Counted from the stretch's first letter, positions 33,251 to 64,000 are shown. The stretch: 64,000 nt of DNA from Paragordius varius (GCA_964247055.1 OZ176053.1:13764001-13828000), one strand, 5' to 3'. Translations and numbers: made by a program. The notes: generated by a model from the sequence alone, not told the origin.

Positions 33251-36200
33251 AGTAAGACTACATGAAAATATAGAGATAGTTTGACAAACTCTTTCATATC
33301 CGATTTTTACAACGATACTTTAAAAATTAATGTATAATTTAGCATACGACAATAAGCAAGTTAAACTTTGTCCTTAAAAATTGGATTTTGGTCTCCGATA
33401 AACAAAATTATTTTTTATACATTCTCTTATTAAGACTACATCAAAATATAGAGATAGTTTGACAAACTCTTTCATATCCGATTTTTACAACGATACTTTA
33501 AAAATTAATGTATAAAACTAGTCGCATCAATACTCAAGTTAAACTTTGTCCTTAAAAATCGGATATTGGTCACCGGTGAACAAAACTATTTTTTATACAT
33601 TCTTTTAGTAAGACTACATGAAAATATAGAGATAGTTTGACAAACTCTTTAATATCTGATTTTTACAACGATACTTTAAAAATTAATGTATAATTTAGCA
33701 TACGATAATAAGCAAGTTAAACTTTGTCCTTAAAAATCGGATATTAGTCGCCGGTAAAGAAAATAATTTTTTATACATTCTCTTAGTAGGACTACATCAA
33801 AAAATAGAGATAGTTTGACAAACTCTTTCATATCCGATTTTTACAACGATACTTTTAAAATTAATGTATAAAACTAATCGCATGAATACTCAAGTTAAAC
33901 TTTGTCCTTAAAAATCGGATATTGGTCACCGGTAAAGAAAATAATTTTTTATACATTCTCTTAGTAGTACTACATCAAAATATAGAGATAGTTTGACAAA
34001 CTCTTTAATATCTGATTTTATAGCGATACTTTTAAAATTAATGTATAAAACTAGTCGCATCAATACTCAAGTTAAACTTTGTCCTTAAAAATCGGATATT
34101 GGTCACCGGTGAACAAAATTATTTTTTATACATTCTCTTAGTAAGACTACATGAAAATATAGAGATAGTTTGACAAACTCTTTCATATCCGATTTTTACA
34201 ACGATACTTTAAAAATTAATGTATAAAACTAGTCGCATCAATACTCAAGTTAAACTTTGTCAAAAATCGGATATTGGTCACCGGTGAACAAAACTATTTT
34301 TTATACATTCTTTTAGTAAGACTACATCAAAATATAGAGATAGTTTGACAAACTCGTTAGTATCTGATTTTTACGAGCGATACTTTAAAAATTAATGTAT
34401 AATTTAGCATACGACAGTAAGCAAGTTAAACTTTGTCCTTAAAAATCGGATATTAGTCGCCGGTAAAGAAAATAATTTTTTATACATTCTCTTACTAGTA
34501 CTACATCAAAATATAGAGATAGTTTGACAAACTCTTTAATATCTGATTTTTAGAGCGATACTATAATTTAGCATACGACAATAAGCAAGTTAAACTTTGT
34601 CCTTAAAAATCGGATATTAGTCGCCGGTAAAGAAAATAATTTTTTATACTTTCTCTTAGTAGGACTACATCATAAAATAGAGATAGTTTGACAAAGTCTT
34701 TCATATCCGATTTTTACAAAGATACTTTTAAAATTAATGTATAAAACTAATCGCATGAATACTCAAGTTAAACTTTGTCCTTAAAAATCGGATATTGGTC
34801 ACCGGTGACCTAAATTATTTTTTATACATTCTCTTAGTAAGACTACATGAAAATATAGAGATAGTTTGACAAACTCTTTCATATCCGATTTTTACAACGA
34901 TACTTTAAAAATTAATGTATAATTTAGCATACGACAATAAGCAAGTTAAACTTTGTCCTTAAAAATTGGATTTTGGTCTCCGATAAACAAAATTATTTTT
35001 TGTACATTCTCTTATTAAGACTACATCAAAATATAGAGATAGTTTGACAAACTCTTTCATATCCGATTTTTACAACGATACTTTTAAAATTAATGTATAA
35101 AACTAATCGCATGAATACTCAAGTTAAACTTTGTCCTTAAAAATCGGATATTGGTCACCGGTAAAGAAAATAATTTTTTATACATTCTCTTACTAGTACT
35201 ACATCAAAATATAGAGATAGTTTTACAAACTCTTTAATATCTGATTTTTAGAGCGATACTATAATTTAGCATACGACAATAAGCAAGTTAAACTTTGTCC
35301 TTAAAAATCGGATATTAGTCGCCGGTAAAGAAAATAATTTTTTATACTTTTTCTTAGTAGGACTACATCAAAAAATAGAGATAGTTTGACAAACTCTTTC
35401 ATATCCGATTTTTACAAAGATACTTTTAAAATTAATGTATAAAACTAGTCGCATCAATACTCAAGTTAAACTTTGTCCTTAAAAATCGGATATTGGTCAC
35501 CGGTGAACAAAACTATTTTTTATACATTCTTTTAGTAAGACTACATGAAAATATAGAGATAGTTTGACAAACTCTTTAATATCTGATTTTTACAACGATA
35601 CTTTAAAAATTAATGTATAATTTAGCATACGACAATAAGCAAGTTAAACTTTGTCCTTAAAAATCGGATATTAGTCGCCGGTAAAGAAAATAATTTTTTA
35701 TACATTCTCTTAGTAGGACTACATCAAAAAATAGAGATAGTTTGACAAACTCTTTCATATCCGATTTTTACAACGATACTTTTAAAATTAATGTATAAAA
35801 CTAATCGCATGAATACTCAAGTTAAACTTTGTCCTTAAAAATCGGATATTGGTCACCGGTAAAGAAAATAATTTTTTATACATTCTCTTAGTAGTACTAC
35901 ATCAAAATATAGAGATAGTTTGACAAACTCTTTAATATCTGATTATTATAACGATACTTTAAAAATTAATGTATAAAACTAGTCGCATCAACACTCAAGT
36001 TAAACTTTGTCCTTAAAAATCGGATATTGGTCACCGGTGAACAAAACTATTTTTTATACATTCTAGTAAGACTACATCAAAATATAGAGATAGTTTGACA
36101 AACTCTTTCATATACGATTTTTACAACGATGCTTTAAAAATTAATGTATAAAACTAGTCGCATCAATACTCAAGTTAAACTTTGTCCTTAAAAATCAGAT

Positions 36201-45200: not shown

Positions 45201-45481
45201 AAACTTTGTCCTTAAAAATCGGATATTAGTCGCCGGTAAAGAAAATAATTTTTATACATTCTCTAAGTAGTACTACATCAAAATATAGAGATAGTTTGAC
45301 AAACTCTTTAATATCTGATTTTTAGAGCGATACTTTAAAAATTAATGTATAAGTAGCATACGACAATAAGCAGGTTAAACTTTGTCCTTAAAAATCGAAT
45401 ATTGGTCTCCGGTGAACAAAATTATTTTTTATACATTCTCTTATTAAGACTACATCAAAATATAGAGATAGTTTGACAAAC

Positions 45482-46770
45482 CCGGCGACTAATATCCGAT
45501 TTTTAAGGAAGTTTAACTTGCTTATTGTCGTATGCTAAATTATACATTAATTTTTAAAGTATCGCTCTAAAAATCAGATATTAAAGAGTTTGTCAAACTA
45601 TCTCGATATTTTGATGTAGTCTTAATAAGAGAATGTATAAAAAATAATTTTGTTCACCAGTGACCAATATCCGATTTTTAACGACAAAGTTTAACTTGAG
45701 TATTGATACGACTAGTTTTATACATTAATTTTTAAAGTATCGTTGTAAAAATCGGATATGAAAGAGTTTGTCAAACTATCTCTATATTTTCATGTAGTCT
45801 TACTAAGAGAATGTATAAAAAATAATTTTGTTCACCGGTGACCAATATCCGATTTTTAAGGACAAAGTTTATGAGTATTGATGCGATTAGTTTTATACAT
45901 TAATTTTAAAAGTATCGTTGTAAAAATCGGATATGAAAGAGTTTGTCAAACTATCTCTATATTTTGATGTAGTCTTACTAAGAGAATGTATAAAAAATAG
46001 TTTTGTTCACCGGTGACCAATATCCGATTTTTGACAAAGTTTAACTTGAGTATTGATGCGACTAGTTTTATACATTAATTTTTAAAGTATCGTTGTAAAA
46101 ATCGGATATGAAAGAGTTTGTCCAACTATCTCTATATTTTGATGTAGTCTTAATAAGAGAATGTATAAAAAATAATTTTGTTCGAGACCAATATCCGATT
46201 TTTAAGGACAAAGTTTAACTTGAGTATTGATGCGATTAGTTTTATACATTAATTTTCAAAGTATCGTTGTAAAAATCGGATATGAAAGAGTTAGTCAAAC
46301 TATTTCTATATTTTGATGTAGTGTTACTAAAAGAATGTATAAAAATAATTTTGTTCACCGGAGACCAATATCCGATTTTTAAGGACAAAGTTTAACTTGC
46401 TTATTGTCGTATGCTAAATTATACATTAATTTTTAAAGTATCGCTCTAAAAATCAGATATTATAGAGTTTGTCAAACTATCTCTATATTTTGATGTAGTC
46501 TTAATAAGAGAATGTATAAAAAATAATTTTGTTCACCGATCCCCAATATCCGTTTTTTAAGGACAAAGTTTAACTTGAGTATTGATACGACTAGTTTTAT
46601 GCATTAATTTTTAAAGTATCGTTGTAAAAATCGGATATGAAAGAGTTTATCAAACTATCTCTATATTTTGATGTAGTCTTACTAAGAGAATGTATAAAAA
46701 ATAATTTTGTTCACCGGTGACCAATATCCGATTTTTAAGGACAAAGTTTAACTTGAGTATTGATGCGACT
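45482..46770 (-). repeat. Inverted satellite, about 7 monomers of the domain-A family (domain B; right edge approximate)
   Basis: The sequence from 45482 (ccggcgactaatatccg...) is the reverse complement of the monomer. It includes class-b monomers (ttattgtcgtatgctaaa near 45522 and 46401) and markers otherwise seen only in domain A. Confidence 0.9.
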
Positions 46771-49700
46771 AGTTTAATACATTAATTTTTAAAGTATCGT
46801 TGTAAAAATCGGATATGAAAGAGTTTGGCAAACTATTTCTATATTTTGATGTAGTCTTACTAAGAGAATGTATAAAAAATTATTTTGTTCACCGGTGACC
46901 AATATCCGATTTTTAAGGACAAAGTTTAACTTGAATATTGATGCGACTAGTTTAATACATTAATTTTTAAAGTATCGTTGTAAAAATCGGATATGAAAGA
47001 GTTTGTCAAACTATCTCTATATTTTGATGTAGTCTTGCTAAGAGAATGTATAAAAAATAATTTTGTTCACCGGTGACCAATATCAGATTTTTAAGGACAA
47101 AGTTTAACTTGAGTATTGATGCGACTAGTTTAATACATTAATTTTTAAAGTATCGTTGTAAAAATCGGATATGAAAGAGTTTGTCAAACTATCTCTATAT
47201 TTTGATGTAGTCTTGCTAAGAGAATATATAAAAAATAATTTTGTTCACCGGTGACCAATATCCGATATTTAAGGACAAAGTTTAATTTGAGTATTGATGC
47301 GACTAGTTTAATACATTAATTTTTAAAGTATCGTTGTAAAAATCGGATATGAAAGAGTTTGTCAAACTATCTCTATTTTGATGTAGTCTTACTAAGAGAA
47401 TGTATAAAAAATTATTTTGTTCACCGGTGACCAATATCCGATTTTTAAGGACAAAGTTAACTTGAGTATTGATGCGACTAGTTTAATACATTAATTTTTA
47501 AAGTATCGTTGTAAAAATCGGATATGAAAGAGTTTGTCAAACTATCTCTATATTTTGATGTGGTCCTACTAAGAGAATGTATAAAAAATAATTTTGTTCA
47601 CCGGTGACCAATATTCGATTTTTAAGGACAAAGTTTAACTTGAGTATTGAAAGGATTTATTGATACAACTAGTTTTATACATTAATTTTTAAAGTATCGT
47701 TGTAAAAATCGGATATGAAAGAGTTTGTCAAACTATCTCTATATTTTGATGTATTCTTGTGAAGAGAATATATAAAAAATAATTTTGTTCACCGGTGACC
47801 AATATCCGATTTTTAAGGACAAAGTTTAATTTGAGTATTGATGCGACTAGTTTAATACATTAATTTTTAAAGTATCGTTGTAAAAATCGGATATGAAAGA
47901 GTTTGTCAAACTATTTCTATATTTTGATGTAGTCTTACTAAGAGAATGTATAAAAAATTATTTTGTTCACCGGTGAACAATATCCGATTTTTAAGGACAA
48001 ATATTAACTTGAGTATTGATGCGACTGGTGTAATACCATAATTTTTAAAGTATCGTTGTAAAAATCGGATATGAAAGAGTTTGTCAAACTATCTCTATAT
48101 TTTGATGTAGTCTTACTAAGAGAATGTATAAAAAATTATTTTGTTTACCGGTGACCAATATCCGATTTTTAAGGACAAAGTTTAACTAGAGTATTGATGC
48201 GACTTATTGATTCGACTAGTTTTATACATTAATTTATAAAGTATCGTTGTAAAAATCGGATATGAAAGAGTTTGTCAAACTATCTCTATATTTTGATGTA
48301 GTCTTGCTAAGAGAATGTATAAAAAATAATTTTGTTCACCGGTGACCAATATCAGATTTTTAAGGACAAAGTTTAACTTGAGTATTGATGCGATTAGTTT
48401 AATACATTAATTTTTAAAGTATCGTTGTAAAAATCGGATATGAAAGAGTTTGTCAAACTATCTCTATATTTTGATGTAGTCTTGCTAAGAGAATATATAA
48501 AAAATAATTTTGTTCACCGGTGACCAATATCCGATATTTAAGGACAAAGTTTAATTTGAGTATTGATGCGACTAGTTTAATACATTAATTTTTAAAGTAT
48601 CGTTGTAAAAATCGGATATGAAAGAGTTTGTCAAACTATCTCTATGTTTTGATGTAGTCTTGCTAAGAGAATGTATAAAAAATAATTTTGTTCACCGGTG
48701 ACCAATATCAGATTTTTAAGGACAAAGTTTAACTTGAGTATTGATGCGACTAGTTTAATACATTAATTTTTAAAGTATCGTTGTAAAAATCGGATATGAA
48801 AGAGTTTGTCAAACTATCTCTATATTTTGATGTAGTCTTGCTAAGAGAATGTATAAAAAATAATTTTGTTCACCGGTGACCAATATCAGATTTTTAAGGA
48901 CAAAGTTTAACTTGAGTATTGATGCGACTAGTTTAATACATTAATTTTTAAAGTATCGTTGTAAAAATCGGATATGAAAGAGTTTGTCAAACTATCTCTA
49001 TATTTTGATGTAGTCTTGCTAAGAGAATATATAAAAAATAATTTTGTTCACCGGTGACCAATATCCGATATTTAAGGACAAAGTTTAATTTGAGTATTGA
49101 TGCGACTAGTTTAATACATTAATTTTTAAAGTATCGTTGTAAAAATCGGATATGAAAGAGTTTGTCAAACTATCTCTATTTTGATGTAGTCTTACTAAGA
49201 GAATGTATAAAAAATTATTTTGTTCACCGGTGACCAATATCCGATTTTTAAGGACAAAGTTTAACTAGAGTATTGATGCGACTTATTGATACGACTAGTT
49301 TTATACATTAATTTATAAAGTATCGTTGTAAAAATCGGATATGAAAGAGTTTGTGAAACTATCTCTATATTTTGATGTAGTCTTGCTAATGTATAAAAAA
49401 TAATTTTGTTCACCGGTGACCAATATCCGATTTTTAAGGACAAAGTTTAACTTGAGTATTGATGCGACTAGTTTAATACATTAATTTTTAAAGTATCGTT
49501 GTAAAAATCGGATATGAAAGAGTTTGGCAAACTATTTCTATATTTTGATGTAGTCTTACTAAGAGAATGTATAAAAAATTATTTTGTTCACCGGTGACCA
49601 ATATCCGATTTTTAAGGACAAAGTTTAACTTGAATATTGATGCGACTAGTTTAATACATTAATTTTTAAAGTATCGTTGTAAAAATCGGATATGAAAGAG

Positions 49701-52700
49701 TTTGTCAAACTATCTCTATATTTTGATGTAGTCTTGCGAAGAGAATGTATAAAAAATAATTTTGTTCACCGGTGACCAATATCCGATTTTTAAGGACAAA
49801 GTTTAACTTGAGTATTGATGCGACTAGTTTAATACATTAATTTTTAAAGTATCGTTGTAAAAACCGGATATGAAAGAGTTTGTCAAACTATCTCTATATT
49901 TTGATGTAGTCTTACTAAGAGAATGTATAAAAAATTATTTTGTTCACCGGTGACCAATATCCGATTTTTAAGGACAAAGTTAACTTGAGTATTGATGCGA
50001 CTAGTTTAATACATTAATTTTTAAAGTATCGTTGTAAAAATCGGATATGAAAGAGTTTGTCAAACTATCTCTATATTTTGATGTGGTCTTACTAAGAGAA
50101 TGTATAAAAAATAATTTTGTTCACCGGTGACCAATATTCGATTTTTAAGGACAAAGTTTAACTTGAGTATTGAAGCGATTTATTGATACAACTAGTTTTA
50201 TACATTAATTTTTAAAGTATCGTTGTAAAAATCGGATATGAAAGAGTTTGTCAAACTATCTCTATATTTTGATGTAGTAATGTGAAGAGAATATATAAAA
50301 AATAATTTTGTTCACCGGTGACCAATATCCGATTTTTAAGGACAAAGTTTAATTTGAGTATTGATGCGACTAGTTTAATACATTAATTTTTAAAGTATCG
50401 TTGTAAAAATCGGATATGAAAGAGTTTGTCAAACTATTTCTATATTTTGATGTAGTCTTACTAAGAGAATGTATAAAAAATTATTTTGTTCACCGGTGAA
50501 CAATATCCGATTTTTAAGGACAAAGTTTAACTTGAGTATTGATGCGACTGGTTTAATACCATAATTTTTAAAGTATCGTTGTAAAAATCGGATATGAAAG
50601 AGTTTGTCAAACTATCTCTATATTTTGATGTAGTCTTACTAAGAGAATGTATAAAAAATTATTTTGTTCACCGGTGTCCAATATCCGATTTTTAAGGACA
50701 AAGTTTACCTTGAGTATTGATGCGACTGGTTTAATACCATAATTTTTAAAGTATCGTTGTAAAAATCGGATATGAAAGAGTTTGTCAAACTATCTCTATA
50801 TTTTGATGTAGTCTTACTAAGAGAATGTATAAAAAATTATTTTGTTCACCGGTGACCAATATCCGATTTTTAAGGACAAAGTTTAACTAGAGTATTGATG
50901 CGACTTATTGATTCGACTAGTTTTATACATTAATTTATAAAGTATCGTTGTAAAAATCGGATATGAAAGAGTTTGTCAAACTATCTCTATATTTTGATGT
51001 AGTCTTAATAAGAGAATGTATAAAAAATTATTTTGTTCACCGGTGACCAATATCCGATTTTTAAGGACAAAGTTTAACTAGAGTATTGATGCGACTTATT
51101 GATACGACTAGTTTTATACATTAATTTATAAAGTATCGTTGTAAAAATCGGATATGAAAGAGTTTGTCAAACTATCTCTATATTTTGATGTAGTCTTACT
51201 AAGAGAATGTATAAAAAATTATTTTGTTCACCGATGACCAATATCCGATTTTTAAGGACAAAGTTTACCTTGAGTATTGATGCGACTGGTTTAATACCAT
51301 AATTTTTAAAGTATCGTTGTAAAAATCGGATATGAAAGAGTTTGTCAAACTATCTCCATATTTTGATGTAGTCTTACTAAGAGAATGTATAAAAAATTAT
51401 TTTGTTCACCGGTGACCAATATCCGATTTTTAAGGACAAAGTTTAACTAGAGAATTGATGCGACTTATTGATTCGACTAGTTTTATACATTAATTTATAA
51501 AGTATCGTTGTAAAAATCGGATATGAAAGAGTTTGTCAAACTATCTCTATATTTTGATGTAGTCTTGCTAAGAGAATGTATAAAAAATAATTTTGTTCAC
51601 CGGTGACCAATATCCGATTTTTAAGGACAAAGTTTAACTTGAGTATTGATGCGACTAGTTTAATACATTAATTTTTAAAGTATCGTTGTAAAAATCGGAT
51701 ATGAAAGAGTTTGTCAAACTATCTCTATATTTTGATGTGGTCTTACTAAGAGAATGTATAAAAAATAATTTTGTTCACCGGTGACGAATATTCGATTTTT
51801 AAGGACAAAGTTTAACTTGAGTATTGAAGCGATTTATTGATACGACTAGTTTTATACATTAATTTTTTAAAGTATCGTTTTAAAAATCGGATATGAAAGA
51901 GTTTGTCAAACTATCTCTATATTTTGTAGTCTTGCTAAGAGAATGTATAAAAAATAATTTTGTTCACCGGTGACCAATATCCGATTTTTAAGGACAAAGT
52001 TTAACTTGAGTATTGATGCGACTAGTTTAATACATTAATTTTTAAAGTATCGTTGTAAAAATCGGATATGAAAGAGTTTGCCAAACTATCTCTATATTTT
52101 GATGTAGTCCTACTAAGAGAATGTATAAAAAATAATTTGGTTCACCAGTGACCAATATCCGATTTTTAAGGACAAAGTTTAACTTGAGTATTGATGCGAT
52201 TTATTGATACGACTAGTTTTTTACATTAATTTTTAAAGTATCGTTGTAAAAATCGGATATGAAAGAGTTTGTCAAACTATCTCTATATTTTGATGTAGTC
52301 TTGCTAAGAGAATGTATATAAAATAATTTTGTTCAGCGGTGACCAAAATCCGATTTTTAAGGACAAAGTTTAACTTGAGTATTGATGCGACTAGTTTAAC
52401 ACATGAATTTTTAAAGTATCGTTGTAAAAATCAAATATGAAAGAGTTTGTCAAACTATCTCTATATTTTGATGTAGTCTTACTAAGAAAATGTATAAAAA
52501 ATAATTTTGTTCACCGGTGACCAATATTCGATTTTTAACGACAAAGTTTAACTTGAGTATTGATGCGACTAGTTTAACACATTAATTTTTAAAATATCGT
52601 TGTAAAAATCGGATATGAAAGAGTTTGTCAAACTATTTCTATATTTTGATGTAGTCTTACTAAGAGAATGTATAAAAAATTATTTTGTTCACCGGTGACC

Positions 52701-53949
52701 AATATCCGATTTTTAAGGACAAAGTTTAACTTGAGTATTGATGCGACTAGTTTAATACATTAATTTTTAAAGTATCGTTGTAAAAATCGGATATGAAAGA
52801 GTTTGTCAAACTATCTATATATTTTGATGTAGTCTTACTAAGAGAATGTATAAAAAATAATTTTGTTCACCGGTGACCAATATCCGATTTTTAAGGACAA
52901 AGTTTAACTTGAGTATTGATGCGACTTGTTTAACACATTAATTTTTAAAATATCGTTGTAAAAATCGGATATGAAAGAGTTTGTCAAACTATATCTATAT
53001 TTTGATGTAGTCTTACTAAGAAAATGTATAAAAAATAATTTTGTTCACCTGTGACCAATATTCGATTTTTAAGGACAAAGTTTAACTTGAGTATTGATGC
53101 GACTAGTTTTATACATTAATTTTTAAGTATCGTTGTAAAAATCGGATATGAAAGAGTTTGCCAAACTATCTCTATATTTTGATATAGTCCTACTAAGAGA
53201 ATGTATAAAAAATAATTTTGTTCACCGGTGACCAATATCCGATTTTTAAGGACAAAGTTTAACTTGAGTATTGATGCGATTTATTGATACGACTAGTTTT
53301 ATACATTAATTTTTAAAGTATCGTTGTAAAAATCGGATATGAAAGAGTTTGTCAAACTATCTCTATATTTTGATGTAGTCTTGCTAAGAGAATGTATAAA
53401 AAATAATTTTGTTCACCGGTGACCAATATCCGATTTTTAAGGACAAAGTTTAACTTGAGTATTGATGCGACTAGTTTAATACATTAATTTTTAAAGTATC
53501 GTTGTAAAAACCGGATATGAAAGAGTTTGTCAAACTATCTCTATATTTTGAAGTCTTGCTAAGAGAATATATAAAAAATAATTTTGTTCACCGGTGACCA
53601 ATATCCGATTTTTAAGGACAAAGTTTAATTTGAGTATTGATGCGACTAGTTTAATACATTAATTTTTAAAGTATCGTTGTAAAAATCGGATATGAAAGAG
53701 TTTGTCAAACTATTTCTATATTTTGATGTAGTCTTACTAAGAGAATGTATAAAAAATTATTTTGTTCACCGGTGACCAATATCCGATTTTTAAGGACAAA
53801 GTTTAACTTGAGTATTGATGCGACTGGTTTTATACCATAATTTTTAAAGTATCGTTGTAAAAATCGGATATGAAAGAGTTTGTCAAATTATCTCTATATT
53901 TTGATGTAGTCTTACTAAGAGAATGTATAAAAAATTATTTTGTTCACCG

Positions 53950-55300
53950 GTGACCAATATCCGATTTTTAAGGACAAAGTTTAACTAGAGTATTGATGCG
54001 ACTTATTGATTCGACTAGTTTTATACATTAATTTATAAAGTATCGTTGTAAAAATTGGATATGAAAGAGTTTGTCAAACTATCTCTATATATTGATGTAG
54101 TCTTGCTAAGAGAATGTATAAAAAATAATTTTGTTCACCGGTGACCAATATCCGATATTTAAGGACAAAGTTTAATTTGAGTATTGATGCGACTAGTTTA
54201 ATACATTAATTTTTAAAGTATCGTTGTAAAAATCGGATATGAAAGAGTTTGTCAAACTATCTCTATATTTTGATGTAGTCTTGCTAAGAGAATATATAAA
54301 AAATAATTTTGTTCACCGGTGACCAATATCCGATATTTAAGGACAAAGATTAATTTGAGTATTGATGCGACTAGTTTAATACATTAATTTTTAAAGTATC
54401 GTTGTAAAAATCGGATATGAAAGAGTTTGTCAAACTATCTCTATTTTGATATAGTCTTACTAAGAGAATGTATAAAAAATTATTTTGTTCACCGGTGACC
54501 AATATCCGATTTTTAAGGACAAAGTTTAACTAGAGTATTGATGCGACTTATTGATTCGACTAGTTTTATACATTAATTTATAAAGTATCGTTGTAAAAAT
54601 TGGATATGAAAGAGTTTGTCAAACTATCTCTATATATTGATGTAGTCTTGCTAAGAGAATGTATAAAAAATAATTTTGTTCACCGGTGACCAATATCCGA
54701 TATTTAAGGACAAAGTTTAATTTGAGTATTGATGCGACTAGTTTAATACATTAATTTTTAAAGTATCGTTGTAAAAATCGGATATGAAAGAGTTTGTCAA
54801 ACTATCTCTATATTTTGATGTAGTCTTGCTAAGAGAATATATAAAAAATAATTTTGTTCACCGGTGACCAATATCCGATATTTAAGGACAAAGATTAATT
54901 TGAGTATTGATGCGACTAGTTTAATACATTAATTTTTAAAGTATCGTTGTAAAAATCGGATATGAAAGAGTTTGTCAAACTATCTCTATTTTGATATAGT
55001 CTTACTAAGAGAATGTATAAAAAATTATTTTGTTCACCGGTGACCAATATCCGATTTTTAAGGACAAAGTTTAACTAGAGTATTGATGCGACTTATTGAT
55101 TCGACTAGTTTTATACATTAATTTATAAAGTATCGTTGTAAAAATCGGATATGAAAGAGTTTGTCAAACTATCTCTATATATTGATGTAGTCTTGCTAAG
55201 AGAATGTATAAAAAATAATTTTGTTCACCGGTGACCAATATCCGATTTTTAAGGACAAAGTTTAATTTGAGTATTGATGCGACTAGTTTAATACATTAAT
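53950..55300 (-). repeat. Local 3-monomer higher-order repeat (545 bp; edges approximate)
   Basis: aaaattggat at 54056 and 54601 (spacing 545). ctatatattgatg at 54091 and 55181 (spacing 1090). 545 = 3x178 + 13 - 2. Confidence 0.85.
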
Positions 55301-58300
55301 TTTTAAAGTATCGCTGTAAAAATCGGATATGAAAGAGTTTGTCAAACTATCTCTATATTTTGATGTAGTCTTGCTAAGAGAACATATAAAAAATAATTTT
55401 GTTCACCGGTGACCAATATCCGATATTTAAGGACAAAGTTTAATTTGAGTATTGATGCGACTAGTTTAATACATTAATTTTTAAAGTATCGTTGTAAAAA
55501 TCGGATATGAAAGAGTTTGTCAAACTATCTCTATTTTGATGTAGTCTTACTAAGAGAATGTATAAAAAATTATTTTGTTCACCGGTGACCAATATCCGAT
55601 TTTTAAGGACAAAGTTTAACTAGAGTATTGATGCGACTTATTGATACGACTAGTTTTATACATTAATTTATAAAGTATCGTTGTAAAAATCGGATATGAA
55701 AGAGTTTGTCAAACTATCTCTATATTTTGATGTAGTCTTGCTAAGAGAATGTAAAAAAAATAATTTTGTTCACCGGTGACCAATATCCGATTTTTAAGGA
55801 CAAAGTTTAACTTGAGTATTGATGCGACTAGTTTAATACATTAATTTTTAAAGTATCGTTGTAAAAATCGGATATGAAAGAGTTTGGCAAACTATTTCTA
55901 TATTTTGATGTAGTCTTACTAAGAGAATGTATAAAAAATTATTTTGTTCACCGGTGACCAATATCCGATTTTTAAGTACAAAGTTTAACTTGAATATTGA
56001 TGCGACTAGTTTAATACATTTTTTAAAGTATCGTTGTAAAAATCGGATATGAAAGAGTTTGTCAAACTATCTCTATATTTTGATGTAGTCTTGCTAAGAG
56101 AATGTATAAAAAATAATTTTGTTCACCGGTGACCAATATCCGGTTTTTAAGGACAAAGTTTAACTTGAGTATTGATGCGACTAGTTTAATACATTAATTT
56201 TTAAAGTATCGTTGTAAAAACCGGATATGAAAGAGTTTGTCAAACTATCTCTATATTTTGATGTAGTCTTACTAAGAGAATGTATAAAAAATTATTTTGT
56301 TCACCGGTGACCAATATCCGATTTTTAAGGACAAAGTTAACTTGAGTATTGATGCGACTAGTTTAATACATTAATTTTTAAAGTATCGTTGAAAAATCGG
56401 ATATGAAAGAGTTTGTCAAACTATCTCTATATTTTGATGTAGTCTTACTAAGAGAATGTATAAAAAATAATTTTGTTCACCGGTGACCAATATCCGATAT
56501 TTAAGGACAAAGTTTAATTTGAATATTGATGCGACTAGTTTAATACATTAATTTTTAAAGTATCGTTGTAAAAATCGGATATGAAAGAGTTTGTCAAACT
56601 ATCTCTATTTTGATGTAGTCTTACTAAGAGAATGTATAAAAAATTATTTTGTTCACCGGTGACCAATATCCGATTTTTAAGGACAAAGTTTAACTAGAGT
56701 ATTGATGCGACTTATTGATACGACTAGTTTTATACATTAATTTAGAAAGTATCGTTGTAAAAATCGGATATGAAAGAGTTTGTCAAACTATCTCTATATT
56801 TTGATGTAGTCTTGCTAAGAGAATGTATAAAAAATAATTTTGTTCACCGGTGACCAATATCCGATTTTTAAGGACAAAGTTTAACTTGAGTATTGATGCG
56901 ACTAGTTTAATACATTAATTTTTAAAGTATCGTTGTAAAAATCGGATATGAAAGAGTTTGGCAAACTATTTCTATATTTTGATGTAGTCTTACTAAGAGA
57001 ATGTATAAAAAATTATTTTGTTCACCGGTGACCAATATCCGATTTTTAAGGACAAAGTTTAACTTGAATATTGATGCGACTATTTTAATACATTAATTTT
57101 TAAAGTATCGTTGTAAAAATCGGATATGAAAGAGTTTGTCAAACTATCTCTATATTTTGATGTAGTCTTGCTAAGAGAATGTATAAAAAATAATTTTGTT
57201 CACCGGTGACCAATATCCGATTTTTAAGGACAAAGTTTAACTTGAGTATTGATGCGACTAGTTTAATACATTAATTTTTAAAGTATCGTTGTAAAAATCG
57301 GATATGAAAGAGTTTGTCAAACTATTTCTATATTTTGATGTAGTCTTACTAAGAGAATGTATAAAAAATAATTTTGTTCACCGGTGACCAATATCAGATT
57401 TTTAAGGACAAAGTTTAACTTGAGTATTGATGCGACTAGTTTAATACATTAATTTTTAAAGTATCGTAGTAAAAATCGGATATGAAAGAGTTTGTCAAAC
57501 TATCTCTATGTTTTGATGTAGTCTTGCTAAGAGAATATATAAAAAATAATTTTGTTCACCGGTGACCAATATCCGATATTTAAGGACAAAGTTTAATTTG
57601 AGTATTGAGGCGACTAGTTTAATACATTAATTTTTAAAGTATCGTTGTAAAAATCGGATATGAAAGAGTTTGTCAAACTATCTCTATTTTGATGTAGTCT
57701 TGCTAAGAGAATGTATAAAAAATAATTTTGTTCACCGGTGACCAATATCCGATTTTTAAGGACAAAGTTTAACTTGAGTATTGATGCGACTAGTTTAATA
57801 CATTAATTTTTAAAGATCGTTGTAAAAATCGGATATGAAAGAGTTTGGCAAACTATTTCTATATTTTGATGTAGTCTTACTAAGAGAATGTATAAAAAAT
57901 TATTTTGTTCACCGGTGACCAATATCCGATTTTTAAGGACAAAGTTTAACTTGAGTATTGATGCGACTAGTTTAATTTAAAGTATCGTTGTAAAAATCGG
58001 ATATGAAAGAGTTTGTCAAACTATCTCTATATTTTGATGTAGTCTTGCTAAGAGAATGTATAAAAAATAATTTTGTTCACCGGTGACCAATATCCGATTT
58101 TTAAGGACAAAGTTTAACTTGAGTATAGATGCGACTAGTTTAATACATTAATTTTTAAAGTGTCGTTGTAAAAACCGGATATGAAAGAGTTTGTCAAACT
58201 ATCTCTATATTTTGATGTAGTCTTACTAAGAGAATGTATAAAAAATTATTTTGTTCACCGGTGACCAATATCCGATTTTTAAGGACAAAGTTAACTTGAG

Positions 58301-58705
58301 TATTGATGCGACTAGTTTAATACATTAATTTTTAAAGTATCGTTGTAAAAATCGGATATGAAAGAGTTTGTCAAACTATCTCTATATTTTGATGTGGTCT
58401 TACTAAGAGAATGTATAAAATATAATTTTGTTCACCGGTGACCAATATTCGATTTTTAAGGACAAAGTTTAACTTGAGTATTGAAGCGATTTATTGATAC
58501 GACTAGTTTTATACATTAATTTTTAAAGTATCGTTGTAAAAATCGGATATAAAAGAGTTTGTCAAACTATCTCTATATTTTGATGTAGTCTTGCTAAGAG
58601 AATATATAAAAAATAATTTTGTTCACCGGTGACCAATATCCGATTTTTAAGGACAAAGTTTAATTTGAGTATTGATGCGACTAGTTTAATACATTAATTT
58701 TTAAA

Positions 58706-58710
58706 GTATC
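58706..58710. other. Left target-site duplication GTATC
   Basis: GTATC immediately precedes the 5' LTR and recurs at 63381-63385. Removing the element and one copy restores the satellite sequence ttaaagtatcgttgtaaaaatcgg. Confidence 0.97.
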
Positions 58711-58840
58711 TGTTATGTATAATAACTTATTTGTTTTTGTTAACTTAACTCAATTAATCTTATTTTAGTTACCATTGAAAATATAATTTGTGCATAATAC
58801 ACCTTTATACTTGTTACGCTAAAAATGTATATTATCTTGG

Positions 58841-58950
58841 TTGTGAATGCTTTTACCTAAATAATGTAATATTGAACCTTATGCAAATATATAACTTGTG
58901 AATGCTTTCATCTAAATATTGAAATATTTAACCTTATGCAAAAATGCAAC
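58841..58950 (+). repeat. Two diverged 55-bp tandem copies in the LTR (also at 63195-63304)
   Basis: 58841-58895 versus 58896-58950 match at 47/55 positions. Both begin ttgtgaatgcttt and contain aaccttatgcaaa. Confidence 0.9.
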
Positions 58951-58963
58951 CTCGCTCTAAAAC

Positions 58964-58972
58964 TATATATAA
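58964..58972 (+). promoter_or_regulatory. Candidate TATA box of the LTR promoter
   Basis: TATATATAA lies just downstream of the 55-bp repeats and about 55 bp from the LTR end. The AT-rich background lowers specificity. Confidence 0.5.
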
Positions 58973-59028
58973 TGGAACATAGTTTTTTTATGATATAGAA
59001 TAAATTCCTTTTTTCCACTTATTACATT

Positions 59029-59040
59029 TGACGCGGTCGA
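59029..59040 (+). promoter_or_regulatory. Putative primer-binding site, non-canonical (TGACGCGGTCGA)
   Basis: GC-rich 12-mer 2 nt after the 5' LTR. It resembles tRNA-Ser-type PBS sequences (TGGCGCAGTCGG) but starts TGA rather than TGG. Confidence 0.5.
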
Positions 59041-59074
59041 TTTTTGTTTTTTGTATTACGCTGTATTCATTATT

Positions 59075-62000
59075 ATGGAAAAAATAAGTATTGAAAGTTA
59101 TAAAATCAATAATAATTTTACGGAATATATTAAATATTTACGAAGAAATTTAGTAATTAAAGGAATACAGGATAATAATGAAAATATTAAAGCCATCTTT
59201 CTTGCCCAATCCGGTATTGATAACATTTCTAAAATGGAACAATTCTTTTACCCCGTTAATATTGAAAACATATCTTGGGAGGAGATTTATGAAGCTGGGG
59301 TGAAAATATTTCAGCCAACCAAAAATACTTTTTTATCCCGATTCGAATTTTTTAGAGCGGAACGATTAGCGGGTGAAGGATTCTTGGAATTTTTTATAAG
59401 ACTCAAAAATATGGCCGCTGCATGCGAATTCAAAGGAAACGTTGACGAATTAATACGGGACGTGTTTATATGTGGGTTGAAGGAGAAAAAACTAGAGACT
59501 GAACTGCTGAACAGGTACCCAAAGGCATTAGACAACGACATACCAGTGGGATTAAATAAGGTTCTAAATCTGGCATTAGCGTATGAAAATTCTCACCTGG
59601 AAGTGAACTCAGTGAGAGCAATATATAATAATGAAAGTAAAAATAATGGTAATAATAATGGTATTACTAATGGTAATAATAATGAAACTTTTAATGATGG
59701 TAGTATTAATAATAATGAAATATATCAGGTAAGACGCAAACCTGTCGTAAAATCGTGTTTTAAATGCGGTCGCGCCCACAAATACGGATGCTGCCCAGCA
59801 TTTGGGAAGGTATGTTTCAAATGTCAGGGTAGAAATCATTTCGGAAGCCAATGCCAAAACAAATATGCTGGCAATAACAGGTATGTGAATAATATCGTAA
59901 ATAAACCTAAAATAAATGTAAAAATAAACTCAACCCACGTCGAAATGTTATTCGACACGGGGGCCGACATATCTTTAATAAATTTTAGCACGTGGGTTAA
60001 AATAGGAAAGCCTAAAATAAAACCCATTTATTTTAACATAAACACTTATGATAATAATCCTTTACACATAATAGGAGAGACAACTGTAACTCTTGAATTA
60101 AATAAATTAAAAAAGATAACAAAATGCTTTATTACGAAGAGACATCTTCCTCTAATATTTGGCATGGATTGGATCCAGCTATTCAATATCTCATTGCCTA
60201 ACGAATTATATATTAATAAATTATATCACACAAATGATATTTACAATAAATTTAAGTCTTTATTTGATAACAAATTGGGTTGTTGGAAAGGGGAACCCAT
60301 AAAGATATTTTTAGAAAACAATAGTAGGGGACGGGTATTTCCGGCTAGAAGGGTTCCCTTGGCCTTACAAGAGAAATTAAGTGAAGAGATCAAAAGGCTA
60401 GTATCCTTAAAAATTATTGAACCAGTAGACCCCAAGCAATCTAAAATTTGTTGGTCCAGTCCTATAGTAAACGTATTAAAGTCAAATAATGAATTAAGAA
60501 TATGCGCAGATTTTAAAGTGTCCATAAACAAATACATTAAAACACCTCAATATATAATACCCACATTTGATGATTTGATTTCCAAAATTTCACATGGTAA
60601 GACGTTTTCAACATTAGATTTAAAAGATGCTTATCTTCAGATTCCAGTGCATCCGGAATCTCAAAATCTTCTCACAATATCCACACCTCTTGGGTTTTTT
60701 AAATATACTAGGCTCCCTTTTGGTCTGTCGTGCGCACCTAGTTTTTTCCAACAAATCATGGATGAGCTATTAGGAGATTGTAAGGGAACAGCGGTCTATT
60801 TAGATGATGTAATTGTTACGGGGGAAACGGATGAGGAGCATTATAGAAACCTAACACAAGTATTTGAAAGATTAGAACGAATGGGTCTTAAATTAAAAAA
60901 AGATAAAATAAAGCTTTTTCAACAGGAAGTAGAATATTTGGGGTTTACTATATCAGAAAAAAGTATAAAACCAGCGTGCAGTAAGATTAAAGCCATTCGC
61001 GAGTGTCCAGCCCCTAAAGATAAAACAAGTCTCCGTTCGTTTTTGGGCCTTTTAAACTTTCATTCACGATTTATACCTTCTCTAAATACAATTGTTAACG
61101 AACTCCATCAGCTAGCTGGTTCCAAAAAGAAATGGTGTTGGACCGAGGTACACCAAAATATTTTTGAAAGGGCGAAGCTATTAATAGGGAATAACAGCCG
61201 CCTCTTCCCTTTTAACCCCAGACTTCCCCTTATTCTAGAAACGGATGCATCTGGGGAGGGGTTTGGGGCCATTTTGTCGCACAGAACGTCGGAAGGTAAA
61301 CGACCCATTGCATATTTTTCAAAAAAATGTTCCCCGGCAGAAAAAAATTATTCGGTTATAGAAAAAGAGGCAAAAGCCATTGTATTGGCCCTAGAGAAAT
61401 TTAAAACATTTTTATATGGCAGAAAATTTGAGATTAGAACAGATCATAAACCTCTTATCAAATTATTCGGGCAGCAACGTGTATTAAGCGAGCTAAACAA
61501 TAGTAAATTGCTAAGATGGATTTCAAAAACATCCATTTTCGACTTCAACATAATGTACTACCCAGGAACCGAAAATCTAGCAGATTCACTATCAAGACTA
61601 CCAACTGAGATAACTGAAGAATGTGACAATGACGAGGATATAGCGCAGGAGGTCCGGTTGCTATGGTGTCAGGAGTTAAACTTAAACAAGGAGAGGGTGC
61701 TTAAGGAAACTATGAGCGATGAGACGTGTAAACAGATTAAAGCAGCACGAAAGACTAATGATTGGTCTCATCCGGGGGTGCAGTCCTATAAACCACTGAG
61801 GAATGATATCGAAGAATCATACGGCCTTCTATATTTAGGTGACCGCCTTATTGTGCCTCAAAGCATGAGGGTTGATGTTCTTAACTATCTTCATAAAGGT
61901 CACCCGGGTATACAGTCCATGAAAGCGTTAGGTAAGAGTGGTGTGTTTTGGCCGAATATGAACCAGGAAATCGAAAAATGGGTGCAAGGCTGCTCAAATT

Positions 62001-63049
62001 GTCAAAAGTCACGGTTTAACATTGCAGTAAGCCCGACGTATAAATGGAACCCGAACACCACCGTTTGGGAGCGATTGCATCTCGATATAGCGGGGCCCGT
62101 AGATAACCTTTACTGGGTCATACTTATAGATCACTGCACCCGTTGGGTGGAAGTAGCACAGCTTAAAACAGTGAACTCGATCAGTATTTTGAAAGTTTTA
62201 GAAGGTTGGTTTGCACGATATGGCACCCCAGAGATGATCGTAACTGATAATGCGTCGTATTTTAAGTCCGGTGATTTTGAAAGAATATTAAGTTCCTCTA
62301 ATATCAAGCATGTAACCTCTGCGCCATACCACCCTCGGACAAATGGTTTAGTGGAAAGAGTCATTCAAACATTGAAAACGCACTATTATATGTGTTCTGA
62401 AGTAGCAGATCCAGAACGCCGGTTAAACCAGGTACTGTGGGCTTACAGATCAGCACATCACAATGGTATAAATGAGACACCTGCACGACTATTCCTAAAA
62501 CGAAATATACCGACTCCGCTGTCTTGGATGAAAGGCAAACCAAAGGATTATATCGATGGTACCTCAGATATTATACGTGAGTTCGTTCCAGGTGAGAAAG
62601 TGTTTATAAAAAATGAGTTGGAAGCCGGTTGGCGAGAGGGAAAAGTTGTAGAGCGGACTGGATTATTGTCCTACAATATCGAAGATAGAGGTAGGGTTTT
62701 ACGAAAGCATACGGATCAATTAAGAAGGCGAAAAGAAGGTCCCGATGAACTTAAGCTAGACGACCCGAAAGAATTGGATAAGCTAGACGACCCGAAAGAA
62801 TTGGAATCGGAACAACAGAATAATAATGATAATATCATAGCCACCCCATTGCATGGTCCTCCTATTGATGACAATATTAATAATGATGATACCAATCCTT
62901 CCCCGGATATTTGTCAAGATTTCCACAATAATCAGCAAAGTCCCAACGGCGATAAGATTGCAGAACCCCCAAGCTTTGAAGTACCAGTGGAGAGACGCTA
63001 TCCTACCAGAAACCGAAAAGCCCCTGACAGATATACAAATCACTTTTAA
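59075..63049 (+). CDS. Gag-Pol polyprotein, 1324 aa from the first ATG (capsid-like region, two zinc knuckles, aspartic protease, RT, RNase H, integrase)
   Basis: Uninterrupted ORF. The track start at 59051 is a TTG; the first ATG is at 59075 and the TAA is at 63047-63049. Motifs: LFDTGAD, LDLKDAYLQ, RLPFG, YLDD, YLG, TDAS, TDHKPL, HKGH...CSNC and D-D-35-E. Confidence 0.96.
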   Translation: MEKISIESYKINNNFTEYIKYLRRNLVIKGIQDNNENIKAIFLAQSGIDNISKMEQFFYPVNIENISWEEIYEAGVKIFQPTKNTFLSRFEFFRAERLAGEGFLEFFIRLKNMAAACEFKGNVDELIRDVFICGLKEKKLETELLNRYPKALDNDIPVGLNKVLNLALAYENSHLEVNSVRAIYNNESKNNGNNNGITNGNNNETFNDGSINNNEIYQVRRKPVVKSCFKCGRAHKYGCCPAFGKVCFKCQGRNHFGSQCQNKYAGNNRYVNNIVNKPKINVKINSTHVEMLFDTGADISLINFSTWVKIGKPKIKPIYFNINTYDNNPLHIIGETTVTLELNKLKKITKCFITKRHLPLIFGMDWIQLFNISLPNELYINKLYHTNDIYNKFKSLFDNKLGCWKGEPIKIFLENNSRGRVFPARRVPLALQEKLSEEIKRLVSLKIIEPVDPKQSKICWSSPIVNVLKSNNELRICADFKVSINKYIKTPQYIIPTFDDLISKISHGKTFSTLDLKDAYLQIPVHPESQNLLTISTPLGFFKYTRLPFGLSCAPSFFQQIMDELLGDCKGTAVYLDDVIVTGETDEEHYRNLTQVFERLERMGLKLKKDKIKLFQQEVEYLGFTISEKSIKPACSKIKAIRECPAPKDKTSLRSFLGLLNFHSRFIPSLNTIVNELHQLAGSKKKWCWTEVHQNIFERAKLLIGNNSRLFPFNPRLPLILETDASGEGFGAILSHRTSEGKRPIAYFSKKCSPAEKNYSVIEKEAKAIVLALEKFKTFLYGRKFEIRTDHKPLIKLFGQQRVLSELNNSKLLRWISKTSIFDFNIMYYPGTENLADSLSRLPTEITEECDNDEDIAQEVRLLWCQELNLNKERVLKETMSDETCKQIKAARKTNDWSHPGVQSYKPLRNDIEESYGLLYLGDRLIVPQSMRVDVLNYLHKGHPGIQSMKALGKSGVFWPNMNQEIEKWVQGCSNCQKSRFNIAVSPTYKWNPNTTVWERLHLDIAGPVDNLYWVILIDHCTRWVEVAQLKTVNSISILKVLEGWFARYGTPEMIVTDNASYFKSGDFERILSSSNIKHVTSAPYHPRTNGLVERVIQTLKTHYYMCSEVADPERRLNQVLWAYRSAHHNGINETPARLFLKRNIPTPLSWMKGKPKDYIDGTSDIIREFVPGEKVFIKNELEAGWREGKVVERTGLLSYNIEDRGRVLRKHTDQLRRRKEGPDELKLDDPKELDKLDDPKELESEQQNNNDNIIATPLHGPPIDDNINNDDTNPSPDICQDFHNNQQSPNGDKIAEPPSFEVPVERRYPTRNRKAPDRYTNHF
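59756..59854 (+). other. Gag nucleocapsid: twin zinc knuckles
   Basis: CFKCGRAHKYGCC (CX2CX3HX4C) followed by CFKCQGRNHFGSQC (CX2CX4HX4C). Confidence 0.92.
59905..60186 (+). other. Retropepsin (aspartic protease) domain, span approximate
   Basis: Catalytic DTG at 59954-59962 in LFDTGADIS, and a C-terminal IFGMDW motif. Confidence 0.9.
60283..60970 (+). other. Reverse transcriptase domain, span approximate
   Basis: WSSPIVNVLK, RICADFK, LDLKDAYLQ, RLPFGLSCAP, YLDD (60797-60808) and VEYLGF. Confidence 0.95.
61226..61600 (+). other. RNase H domain, span approximate
   Basis: ETDAS (TDAS at 61241-61252), YSVIEKE, RTDHKPL and NLADSLSR. Confidence 0.93.
61826..62731 (+). other. Integrase (HHCC zinc finger, DDE core, C-terminal domain), span approximate
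   Basis: H at 61892 and 61901, CSNC at 61991-62002. D at 62084 (HLDIAGP), D at 62246 (VTDN) and E at 62354 (VERV) give D-X35-E spacing. Confidence 0.95.
62752..62805 (+). repeat. Perfect in-frame 27-bp tandem duplication in the integrase tail
   Basis: taagctagacgacccgaaagaattgga occurs twice, encoding KLDDPKEL(D/E) twice. Confidence 0.95.
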
Positions 63050-63052
63050 ATT

Positions 63053-63064
63053 AGATAGGAGATA
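63053..63064 (+). promoter_or_regulatory. Polypurine tract (imperfect)
   Basis: AGATAGGAGATA (10/12 purines) abuts the 3' LTR start. Confidence 0.75.
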
Positions 63065-63380
63065 TGTTATGTATAATAACTTATTTGTTTTTGTTAACTT
63101 AACTCAATTAATCTTATTTTAGTTACCATTGAAAATATAATTTGTGCATAATACACCTTTATACTTGTTACGCTAAAAATGTATATTATCTTGGTTGTGA
63201 ATGCTTTTACCTAAATAATGTAATATTGAACCTTATGCAAATATATAACTTGTGAATGCTTTCATCTAAATATTGAAATATTTAACCTTATGCAAAAATG
63301 CAACCTCGCTCTAAAACTATATATAATGGAACATAGTTTTTTTATGATATAGAATAAATTCCTTTTTTCCACTTATTACA
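63065..63380 (+). repeat. 3' LTR, 316 bp
   Basis: Direct repeat of 58711-59026 at an offset of 4354; TG...CA ends. Confidence 0.97.
63353..63358 (+). terminator. Candidate polyadenylation signal AATAAA in the 3' LTR
   Basis: AATAAA lies 22 nt before the LTR end; its counterpart is at 58999-59004. Confidence 0.55.
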
Positions 63381-63385
63381 GTATC
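63381..63385. other. Right target-site duplication GTATC
   Basis: Follows the 3' LTR CA and matches 58706-58710. Confidence 0.97.
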
Positions 63386-64000
63386 GTTGTAAAAATCGGA
63401 TATGAAAGAGTTTGTCAAACTATTTCTATATTTTGATGTAGTCTTACTAAGAGAATGTATAAAAAATTATTCTGTTCACCGGTGAACAATATCCGATTTT
63501 TAAGGACAAAGTTTAACTTGAGTATTGATGCGACTGGTTTAATACCATAATTTTTAAAGTATCGTTGTAAAAATCGGATATGAAAGAGTTTGTCAAAATA
63601 TCTCTATATTTTGATGTAGTCTTACTAAGAGAATGTATAAAAAATTATTTTGTTCACCGGTGACCAATATCCGATTTTTAAGGACAAAGTTTAACTAAAG
63701 TATTGATGCGACTTATTGATACGACTACTTTTATACATTAATTTATAAAGTATCGTTGTAAAAATCGGATATGAAAGAGTTTGTCAAACTATCTCTATAT
63801 TTTGATGTAGTCTTGCTAAGAGAATGTATAGAAAATAATTTTGTTCACCGGTGACCAATATCCGATTTTTAAGGACAAAGTTTAACTTGAGTATTGATGC
63901 GACTAGTTTAATACATTAATTTTTAAAGTATCGTTGTAAAAATCGGATATGAAAGAGTTTGTCAAACTATCTCTATATTTTGATGTAGTCTTGCTATGAG
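63381..64000 (-). repeat. Domain-C satellite resumes in register (about 3.5 monomers, open at the right edge)
   Basis: gtatcgttgtaaaaatcggatatgaaagag... carries domain-C markers, including gcgactggtttaataccat and the 13-bp insertion near 63710. Confidence 0.97.

What the first reader, a model, noticed from the sequence alone, without database searches (positions are those of the whole stretch)
58711..63380. Very young, coding-intact Mag-like Ty3/Gypsy element inside a 178-bp satellite: candidate satellite- or centromere-seeking family
Seen: 316/316 LTR identity by eye, perfect TSD, no stops or frameshifts, all catalytic motifs present, 85% of the element coding, and the only non-satellite DNA in 64 kb. 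Established: identical LTRs indicate recent insertion, and centromere-associated LTR families are known in plants (CRM chromoviruses, ATHILA). Inference: this could be an analogous system in a lineage typical of animals that lacks a chromodomain. One insertion cannot show targeting, because satellite DNA may simply be a large neutral target.
Basis: partly seen in the sequence, partly recalled or inferred. Interest (0 to 1): 0.75.

Follow-up and report, generated by a model that had tools for sequence, protein, structure and literature searches.

The report
Young jumping gene in satellite DNA
An intact, recently inserted gypsy-type jumping gene does sit inside a 178-letter satellite array, but its roughly 30 sister copies land in satellite DNA only about as often as chance predicts, so it looks like an ordinary insertion and not a satellite- or centromere-seeking family.

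Summary
At 58711-63380 there is a 4,670-bp Ty3/gypsy LTR retrotransposon with:
- two 316-bp LTRs that are 316/316 identical;
- a 5-bp target-site duplication, GTATC;
- one uninterrupted gag-pol reading frame of 1,324 aa from the ATG, 85% of the element;
- a tRNA-Ser primer site and a polypurine tract.

It is the only non-satellite DNA in the window.

The Mag-like label is reasonable. The best database relatives are "K02A2.6-like" animal polyproteins at 31-41% identity. The element has two zinc knuckles, a single ORF and no chromodomain. I built no reference phylogeny.

The 178-bp satellite makes up about 3.1-3.6% of the 110.6-Mb assembly. A second, unrelated 173-bp satellite makes up about 3.1-3.3%. 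Of about 32 independent insertions of this family, one is in the first satellite (this copy) and one is in the second. That is 6.3% observed against 6.2-6.9% expected.

One caveat remains. In the youngest cohort, 2 of 4 copies are in satellite (nominal p about 0.02, chosen post hoc), so a mild bias hidden by array turnover is not excluded.

The CENP-C-like arginine tail of the integrase occurs across the whole lineage. Whether the arrays are centromeric cannot be tested here. Other first-reader notes from this scan cover the same stretch for other features.

The parts
2..45481 (-). 178-bp satellite array (satellite A), reverse orientation
   Evidence: TRF period 178/356; monomer 24-mer matches on the reverse strand at 40-45375
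45482..58710 (+). 178-bp satellite array, forward orientation, up to the insertion site
   Evidence: TRF period 178, 91% matches
58706..58710 (+). left copy of the 5-bp target-site duplication GTATC
   Evidence: empty-site reconstruction colinear with the satellite
58711..59026 (+). 5' LTR, 316 bp, TG...CA; TATA-like sites at 58888 and 58964, AATAAA at 58999
   Evidence: 316/316 identical to the 3' LTR; signals read from sequence
59029..59040 (+). primer-binding site TGACGCGGTCGA; 11 of 12 bases complementary to the 3' end (with CCA) of tRNA-Ser(AGA)
   Evidence: older copies carry TGGCGCGGTCGA, a perfect 12-nt complement; the tRNA-Ser(AGA) genes end in TCGACCGCG
59075..63049 (+). single gag-pol ORF, 1,324 aa plus stop
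59756..59854 (+). two CCHC zinc knuckles of the nucleocapsid
   Evidence: weak zf-CCHC Pfam hit
59954..59965 (+). protease active site DTGA
60797..60808 (+). reverse transcriptase YLDD
61241..61252 (+). RNase H TDAS motif
62075..62359 (+). integrase catalytic core (D in LHLDI, D in VTDN, E in GLVER)
   Evidence: rve Pfam hit; motif positions
62993..63034 (+). C-terminal arginine-rich tail RRYPTRNRKAPDRY
   Evidence: identical in the six youngest copies, with substitutions in four older ones and a frameshift in the oldest; a similar motif at the C-end of at least 66 of 120 homologues
63053..63064 (+). polypurine tract AGATAGGAGATA abutting the 3' LTR
   Evidence: conserved in all copies
63065..63380 (+). 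3' LTR
63381..63385 (+). right copy of the target-site duplication GTATC
63381..64000 (+). 178-bp satellite resumes; it ends 3.9 kb past the window, where a 173-bp satellite begins

Best explanation
This is a recent, ordinary integration of an autonomous Ty3/gypsy LTR retrotransposon of the animal Mag lineage. The family is low-copy and has been in this genome for a long time. Inferred life cycle, from established LTR-retrotransposon biology: the 5' LTR drives a full-length RNA. One Gag-Pol polyprotein (capsid, two-knuckle nucleocapsid, protease, RT, RNase H, integrase) is made and cleaved by its own protease. tRNA-Ser(AGA) primes minus-strand DNA at the site 2 nt after the LTR, and the polypurine tract primes the plus strand. 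Integrase joins the DNA across a 5-bp stagger. This copy landed in a satellite because the two terminal satellites are a sizeable neutral target, about 6-7% of the assembly, where insertions do no harm. It did not land there because the family aims at them. Shown: the anatomy, the youth, the primer tRNA and the genome-wide distribution. Inferred: the expression and replication steps.
For: The family spans a range of ages: LTR-pair identity runs from 91.8% to 100%, and the window copy differs from its nearest sister by 11 substitutions in 4,670 bp. The 5-bp duplications of ten copies share no consensus: GTATC, AAAAA, GGTAG, ATGGT, CCCCT/CCGCT, CTCAC, CATAC, AACAT, ATATA and ATATA. Only 1 of 30 family loci has satellite A in its flanks. 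Junction searches find only this copy next to satellite A and only the C3 copy next to satellite B. Satellite A has 19,000 monomer hits at 85% detection, or 3.1-3.6% of the assembly. Satellite B has 19,723 hits at 94% detection, or 3.1-3.3%. About 32 independent 5' or solo LTR starts exist, so 2 of 32 is 6.3%, and the binomial P(>=2) is about 0.6. Many other copies lie next to interspersed repeats shared between flanks. That fits survival in gene-poor DNA.
Against: In the youngest cohort, the four insertions whose LTR start is identical to this one, 2 of 4 lie in satellite. The nominal binomial p is about 0.02, but the cohort was chosen post hoc. With the eight insertions whose LTR pairs are at least 99.2% identical, the count is 2 of 8 and p is about 0.09. 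Satellite arrays purge insertions by turnover (stated for Arabidopsis in PMC11735389), so older array insertions may have been lost. Satellite share was estimated from one 24-mer per satellite, and other tandem repeats were not counted. The own-genome search scored only the best candidates.
Confidence: 0.8

Rival explanations
1. The family has a real but moderate integration preference for the terminal satellite heterochromatin, possibly centromeric chromatin. The preference would be mediated by the integrase C-terminal arginine tail. Older array insertions have been erased by satellite turnover, so only the youngest cohort shows the bias.
For: In the youngest cohort, 2 of 4 insertions are in two different satellites. 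The tail RRYPTRNRKAPDRY is identical in the six youngest copies. From my own recall, it resembles arginine-anchor nucleosome binders such as HMGN and the CENP-C motif. In Arabidopsis the integrase C-terminal region sets centromere preference, and centromeric arrays purge insertions (PMC11735389).
Against: Overall, 2 of about 32 insertions matches the genome share. The same tail motif sits at the C-end of most homologues from arthropods, fish and many unnamed sources, so it is not special to this family or to satellites. The two satellites are unrelated in sequence. The cohort was chosen after seeing the data. No centromere mark is available.
Confidence: 0.13
2. The family targets repeat-rich, gene-poor chromatin in general through a chromatin tether, and does not simply survive there by selection.
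For: Flanks of at least seven full-length copies share interspersed repeats with the flanks of other copies in a sample of only about 90 kb. Two further copies are in satellites.
Against: The same pattern is expected from purifying selection in a compact 110-Mb genome. No chromodomain or other known heterochromatin reader is present. The repeat share of the genome was not measured.
Confidence: 0.15
3. The junctions are an assembly artefact: a mis-join of a retrotransposon read into a satellite array.
For: Satellite arrays are hard to assemble.
Against: The 5-bp duplication is perfect, and the reconstructed empty site is colinear with neighbouring monomers. There are no Ns in the window.
Confidence: 0.02

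Closest known systems
Mag lineage of Ty3/gypsy elements, C-clade (SURL, Steamer and the many proteins labelled K02A2.6-like)
   Same: The best database hits are K02A2.6-like polyproteins of animals at 31-41% identity over RT to IN. PMC8905726 relates that label to the C-clade. Gag and pol are in a single ORF, as in Steamer (PMC8905726). There are two CCHC arrays, as is usual for Mag elements (PMC2577118). There is no chromodomain and no env.
   Different: Only 31-41% identical to anything in the database, so this is a new family. I built no RT/RNase H tree with reference elements, so the clade within Mag is not fixed.
Centrophilic LTR retrotransposons of plants (CRM chromoviruses, ATHILA, Tal1)
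   Same: An LTR element inside a tandem-repeat array near a chromosome end. It has a variable integrase C-terminal tail, the region that sets centromere preference in Tal1/EVD (PMC11735389).
   Different: Those families are strongly enriched in centromeric arrays or CENH3 chromatin. Here 1 of about 32 insertions is in this satellite and 2 of about 32 in any of the two satellites, equal to the genome share. There is no chromodomain or CR motif. Centromere identity is unknown.
Ty3 of budding yeast
   Same: Same superfamily, the same PR-RT-RH-IN order, tRNA priming and a 5-bp duplication.
   Different: Ty3 targets Pol III start sites and has separate gag and pol frames (my own recall). This element has one frame and no visible site preference.

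Membership tests
Ty3/gypsy (Metaviridae) LTR retrotransposon | Direct LTRs with TG...CA ends flanked by a short target-site duplication | tested here: met
   316-bp identical LTRs and a 5-bp GTATC duplication
Ty3/gypsy (Metaviridae) LTR retrotransposon | Domain order protease, RT, RNase H, integrase | tested here: met
   Pfam RVP 284-315, RVT_1 493-634, RT_RNaseH 723-826, Integrase_H2C2 935-987, rve 1016-1095
Ty3/gypsy (Metaviridae) LTR retrotransposon | tRNA primer-binding site after the 5' LTR and polypurine tract before the 3' LTR | tested here: met
   The PBS complements tRNA-Ser(AGA): 12/12 in older copies and 11/12 in this one. The PPT is conserved.
Mag lineage (A/B/C clades) | RT/RNase H groups with Mag, SURL and related reference elements in a phylogeny | not tested
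   No named reference sequences could be fetched. The only indirect support is that the best hits carry the K02A2.6-like label, which PMC8905726 relates to the C-clade.
Mag lineage (A/B/C clades) | Nucleocapsid with two CCHC arrays | tested here: met
   Two knuckles at residues 228-240 and 247-260; feature stated in PMC2577118
Mag lineage (A/B/C clades) | No chromodomain and no env gene | tested here: met
   No Pfam family in the last 194 residues even at E up to 5. No second ORF of 100 aa or more.
Centromere- or satellite-targeting retrotransposon family | Family copies enriched in the satellite above its genome share | tested here: not met
   Satellite A: 1 of about 32 insertions against a 3.1-3.6% share. 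Satellites A+B: 2 of about 32 against 6.2-6.9%.
Centromere- or satellite-targeting retrotransposon family | Host array bound by CENH3 | not testable with these tools
   No chromatin data. The arrays lie in the last 1.2 Mb of C4 and near one end of C1, C2 and C5.
Centromere- or satellite-targeting retrotransposon family | Family-specific targeting module in the integrase C-terminus | tested here: not met
   The arginine tail is shared by at least 66 of 120 homologues from many animals, so it is not specific to this family.

The most novel reading that the evidence does not exclude
The newest insertions of this family (2 of 4 in two unrelated terminal satellites) reflect a real chromatin-guided preference for the satellite domain at chromosome ends. 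The preference would work through the lineage-wide integrase tail (RR[SY]..R.R.PP.R[YFL]), which would act as a nucleosome-binding arginine anchor. Array turnover has erased the older evidence. If true, this would be an animal, chromodomain-less counterpart of plant centrophilic elements. It would also assign a function to a tail motif conserved across Mag-lineage integrases.
Probability: 0.1. Interest if true: 0.6.

Novelty: new member of a known kind. Interest (0 to 1): 0.2.

Why it matters
As it stands, this is a clean reference example of a recently active Mag-lineage retrotransposon in a very AT-rich animal genome. It is useful for annotation and for dating satellite turnover, but it is not a new mechanism.

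Its main value is negative. An intact young element alone in 64 kb of satellite looks like targeting. A count across the genome shows it is what random insertion into a 3-7% target would give.

The lineage-wide integrase tail motif and the two-satellite architecture of the chromosome ends are the by-products most worth a further look.

Tried and rejected
The flanks of about 15 solo-LTR places could therefore not be read. I replaced that step with junction-pattern searches.
- **** used a pattern I mistyped. It missed even the window copy and is void; one search repeats it correctly.
- **Own-genome searches** are exhausted (12 of 12). Other tandem repeats, total repeat share and the other chromosome lengths were not measured.
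- **RT phylogeny** against GyDB or Repbase references was not possible.
- **NCBIfam** gave only sub-threshold transposase and RT similarities.
- **Literature searches** for an acidic-patch or CENP-C-motif role of retrotransposon integrase tails found no paper on this motif.
- **Self-priming or a non-tRNA primer** was considered for the odd TGAC start of the primer site. I rejected it once older copies showed TGGC and the tRNA-Ser match.
- **The big representative protein search** and structure prediction were not used. The family scans and the word search left nothing open.

Full report
**1. The observation**

The window is G000:C4:13764001-13828000 of a 110.6-Mb assembly in 44 contigs. C4 is 14,197,898 bp long, so the window lies about 370 kb from its right end.

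TRF finds one 178-bp satellite (here "A") in three stretches:
- 2-45481, reverse orientation;
- 45482-58710, forward;
- 63376-64000, forward.

The only other DNA is a 4,670-bp element at 58711-63380.
- Its LTRs (58711-59026 and 63065-63380) are 316/316 identical and run TG...CA.
- GTATC is duplicated on both sides.
- With the element and one GTATC removed, the site is colinear with neighbouring monomers.
- One frame is open from 59051 to 63049, with the ATG at 59075. It gives 1,324 aa and covers 85.1% of the element.
- Pfam finds protease, RT, RNase H, the integrase zinc domain and the integrase core, in that order.
- DTGA, YLDD, TDAS, the integrase D, D, E context and two CCHC knuckles are all present.

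**2. Further anatomy**

*Primer site.* Two bases after the 5' LTR comes the 12-nt primer-binding site. Older copies of the family read TGGCGCGGTCGA. The window copy and its closest relatives read TGACGCGGTCGA.

A pattern search for the complement next to a T-loop found three exact sites. ARAGORN, run on two of those three, called both tRNA-Ser(AGA) genes ending in TCGACCGCG, followed by a T run. With the added CCA this is a perfect 12-nt match to the older form and an 11/12 match to the window copy. The family is therefore primed by tRNA-Ser(AGA).

*Other signals.*
- The polypurine tract AGATAGGAGATA abuts the 3' LTR and is conserved in all copies.
- The LTR holds TATA-like sites and one AATAAA.
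- The last 194 residues match no Pfam family even at E up to 5, so there is no chromodomain.
- Gag is recognisable only weakly: Retrotrans_gag at E 0.22 and zf-CCHC at E 0.012.

**3. Classification**

The word search found 3,363 relatives. The best are 31-41% identical over RT to integrase. Wherever they are named, they are "K02A2.6-like" proteins of animals: a pseudoscorpion, a leafhopper, a kissing bug and fishes. The window's own protein is not in that collection.

The literature supports a Mag-lineage reading:
- PMC8905726 reports that this label marks Steamer-like elements and seems to correspond to the C-clade of Gypsy.
- PMC6238403 places the A, B and C clades in the Mag lineage, with SURL in the C-clade.
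- PMC8905726 also reports a single gag-pol ORF for Steamer elements.
- PMC2577118 reports two CCHC arrays as usual for Mag elements.

All of this fits, so "Mag-like" is a fair label. I could not build a tree with reference elements, so membership of a particular clade remains untested.

**4. The family in this genome**

A DNA search of the whole assembly returned 57 matched pieces at 30 loci. For fifteen copies with both LTRs I measured LTR-pair identity, duplications and open frames.
- LTR pairs range from 91.8% to 100% identical.
- The window copy differs from its nearest sister (on C4 at 6.68 Mb) by 11 substitutions, and from the next (on C3 at 13.98 Mb) by 21.
- Two copies have the full frame open. 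The others carry stops or frameshifts.
- One copy on C10 is an internally deleted derivative with identical LTRs.

The family is an old resident with recent activity, not a newcomer. The 5-bp duplications of ten copies show no shared sequence.

**5. The targeting test**

*Satellite A.* Only the window copy has satellite A within 1.5 kb of either end. The own-genome search scores only the best candidates. I therefore also searched the whole assembly for an LTR start or an LTR end lying within 190 bp of the palindromic core of the monomer (TCACCGGTGA). Each search found only the window copy. One search was a mistyped pattern and is void.

*A second satellite.* Comparing left and right flanks showed that the C3 copy sits in an unrelated 173-bp satellite (here "B"). 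The same junction test for satellite B, in both orientations, found only that copy.

*Genome share.*

| Satellite | 24-mer hits (up to 2 mismatches) | Detection rate | Share of assembly |
|---|---|---|---|
| A (178 bp) | 19,000 | 85% in the window | 3.1-3.6% |
| B (173 bp) | 19,723 | 94% in sampled arrays | 3.1-3.3% |

*Counts.* From the list of LTR starts I count about 32 independent 5' or solo LTRs that the junction pattern could have caught.
- One in satellite A is 3.1%, against 3.1-3.6% expected.
- Two in A or B is 6.3%, against 6.2-6.9% expected. The binomial P of two or more is about 0.6.

**6. What keeps the door slightly open**

The four insertions whose LTR start is identical to the window copy are the youngest. 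Two of them are in satellite, a nominal p of about 0.02. That cohort was defined after seeing the data.

With the eight insertions whose LTR pairs are at least 99.2% identical, the count is 2 of 8 and p is about 0.09.

[quoted passage not shown] If that applies here, older array insertions could have been lost. I therefore leave about 10-13% for a moderate real bias.

Many of the non-satellite copies lie beside interspersed repeats that recur among the flanks of other copies. That fits survival in gene-poor DNA of a compact genome, and it does not require targeting.

**7. The integrase tail**

Another first-reader note (s1-239974) pointed to the C-terminal peptide RRYPTRNRKAPDRY as CENP-C-like.
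- It is identical in the six youngest copies. Four older copies carry substitutions, and the oldest is frameshifted there.
- More telling, a motif of the same form (RR[SY]..R.R.PP.R[YFL]) sits at the extreme C-end of at least 66 of the 120 best homologues.

It is therefore a trait of the whole lineage, not an adaptation of this family to satellites.

From my own recall, it resembles arginine-anchor peptides that bind the nucleosome acidic patch, such as HMGN and the CENP-C motif. A general nucleosome tether is a reasonable guess. Two literature searches found no paper on it, and nothing here tests it.

**8. Is the array centromeric?**

This cannot be tested here. What can be said is positional.
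- On C4, satellite A was present at five of six points sampled between 13.0 and 13.7 Mb and runs through the window to 13.832 Mb. Satellite B was found at the sixth point (13.5 Mb). Satellite B then continues from 13.832 Mb to at least 14.10 Mb of 14.198 Mb.
- Satellite A also lies at 1.06-1.6 Mb of C1, 0.53 Mb of C2 and 0.58 Mb of C5.
- Satellite B lies nearer the ends, at 0.32 Mb of C1 and 0.01 Mb of C2.
- An unchecked note (s1-368188) reports an 8-kb block between satellite and telomere on one end of six chromosomes.

This layout would suit telocentric chromosomes or plain subtelomeric heterochromatin.

**9. Verdict**

Satellite or centromere seeking is not supported. This is a new family of a well-known kind.

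The one experiment that would need the element to be mobilised is referred.

Noticed in passing
L003 (G000:C3:13974446-13982117); L031:3901-10000; L032, L033, L038: A second satellite of 173 bp, unrelated in sequence to the 178-bp one, has about 19,700 monomer hits (about 3.1-3.3% of the assembly). On C4 it abuts the 178-bp array 3.9 kb past the window and fills the stretch towards the chromosome end. On C1 and C2 it lies nearer the end than the 178-bp satellite.
   Followed up: partly
window 59029-59040 and the same site in L002-L015: The most recently active copies carry TGAC instead of TGGC at the start of the primer-binding site. That is a mismatch to the CCA end of tRNA-Ser(AGA). Older copies have the perfect match. 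It is unclear why the mismatch persists in the active lineage.
   Followed up: partly
window 62993-63034; proteins P0014-P0119: An arginine-rich motif of the form RR[SY]..R.R.PP.R[YFL] ends the integrase of most K02A2.6-like (Mag-lineage) polyproteins from many animals. I found no paper describing it. It looks like a nucleosome acidic-patch anchor, but that is untested.
   Followed up: partly
window 45481/45482: The 178-bp satellite switches orientation here, and the GC skew changes sign at about the same place. Another note of the scan (s1-273744) covers the junction.
   Followed up: no
L009 and L010 (G000:C7:2.897 and 2.948 Mb); L013 and L014 (G000:C7:5.66 and 6.09 Mb): Two pairs of family copies share their flanks: 99.6-99.9% identity for the first pair and 91-94% for the second. 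They are segmental duplications that carried an element along, not separate insertions.
   Followed up: partly
L024 (G000:C10:2566359-2568566): This is a 2.2-kb derivative of the family that lacks gag, protease and half of RT. It has 317/317 identical LTRs and an ATATA duplication. Either a defective copy was moved recently in trans, or the deletion came after insertion.
   Followed up: no
L007:6694-7692 (right flank): A 78-bp tandem repeat of about 12.6 copies starts 500 bp downstream of the C5:10.13 Mb copy.
   Followed up: no
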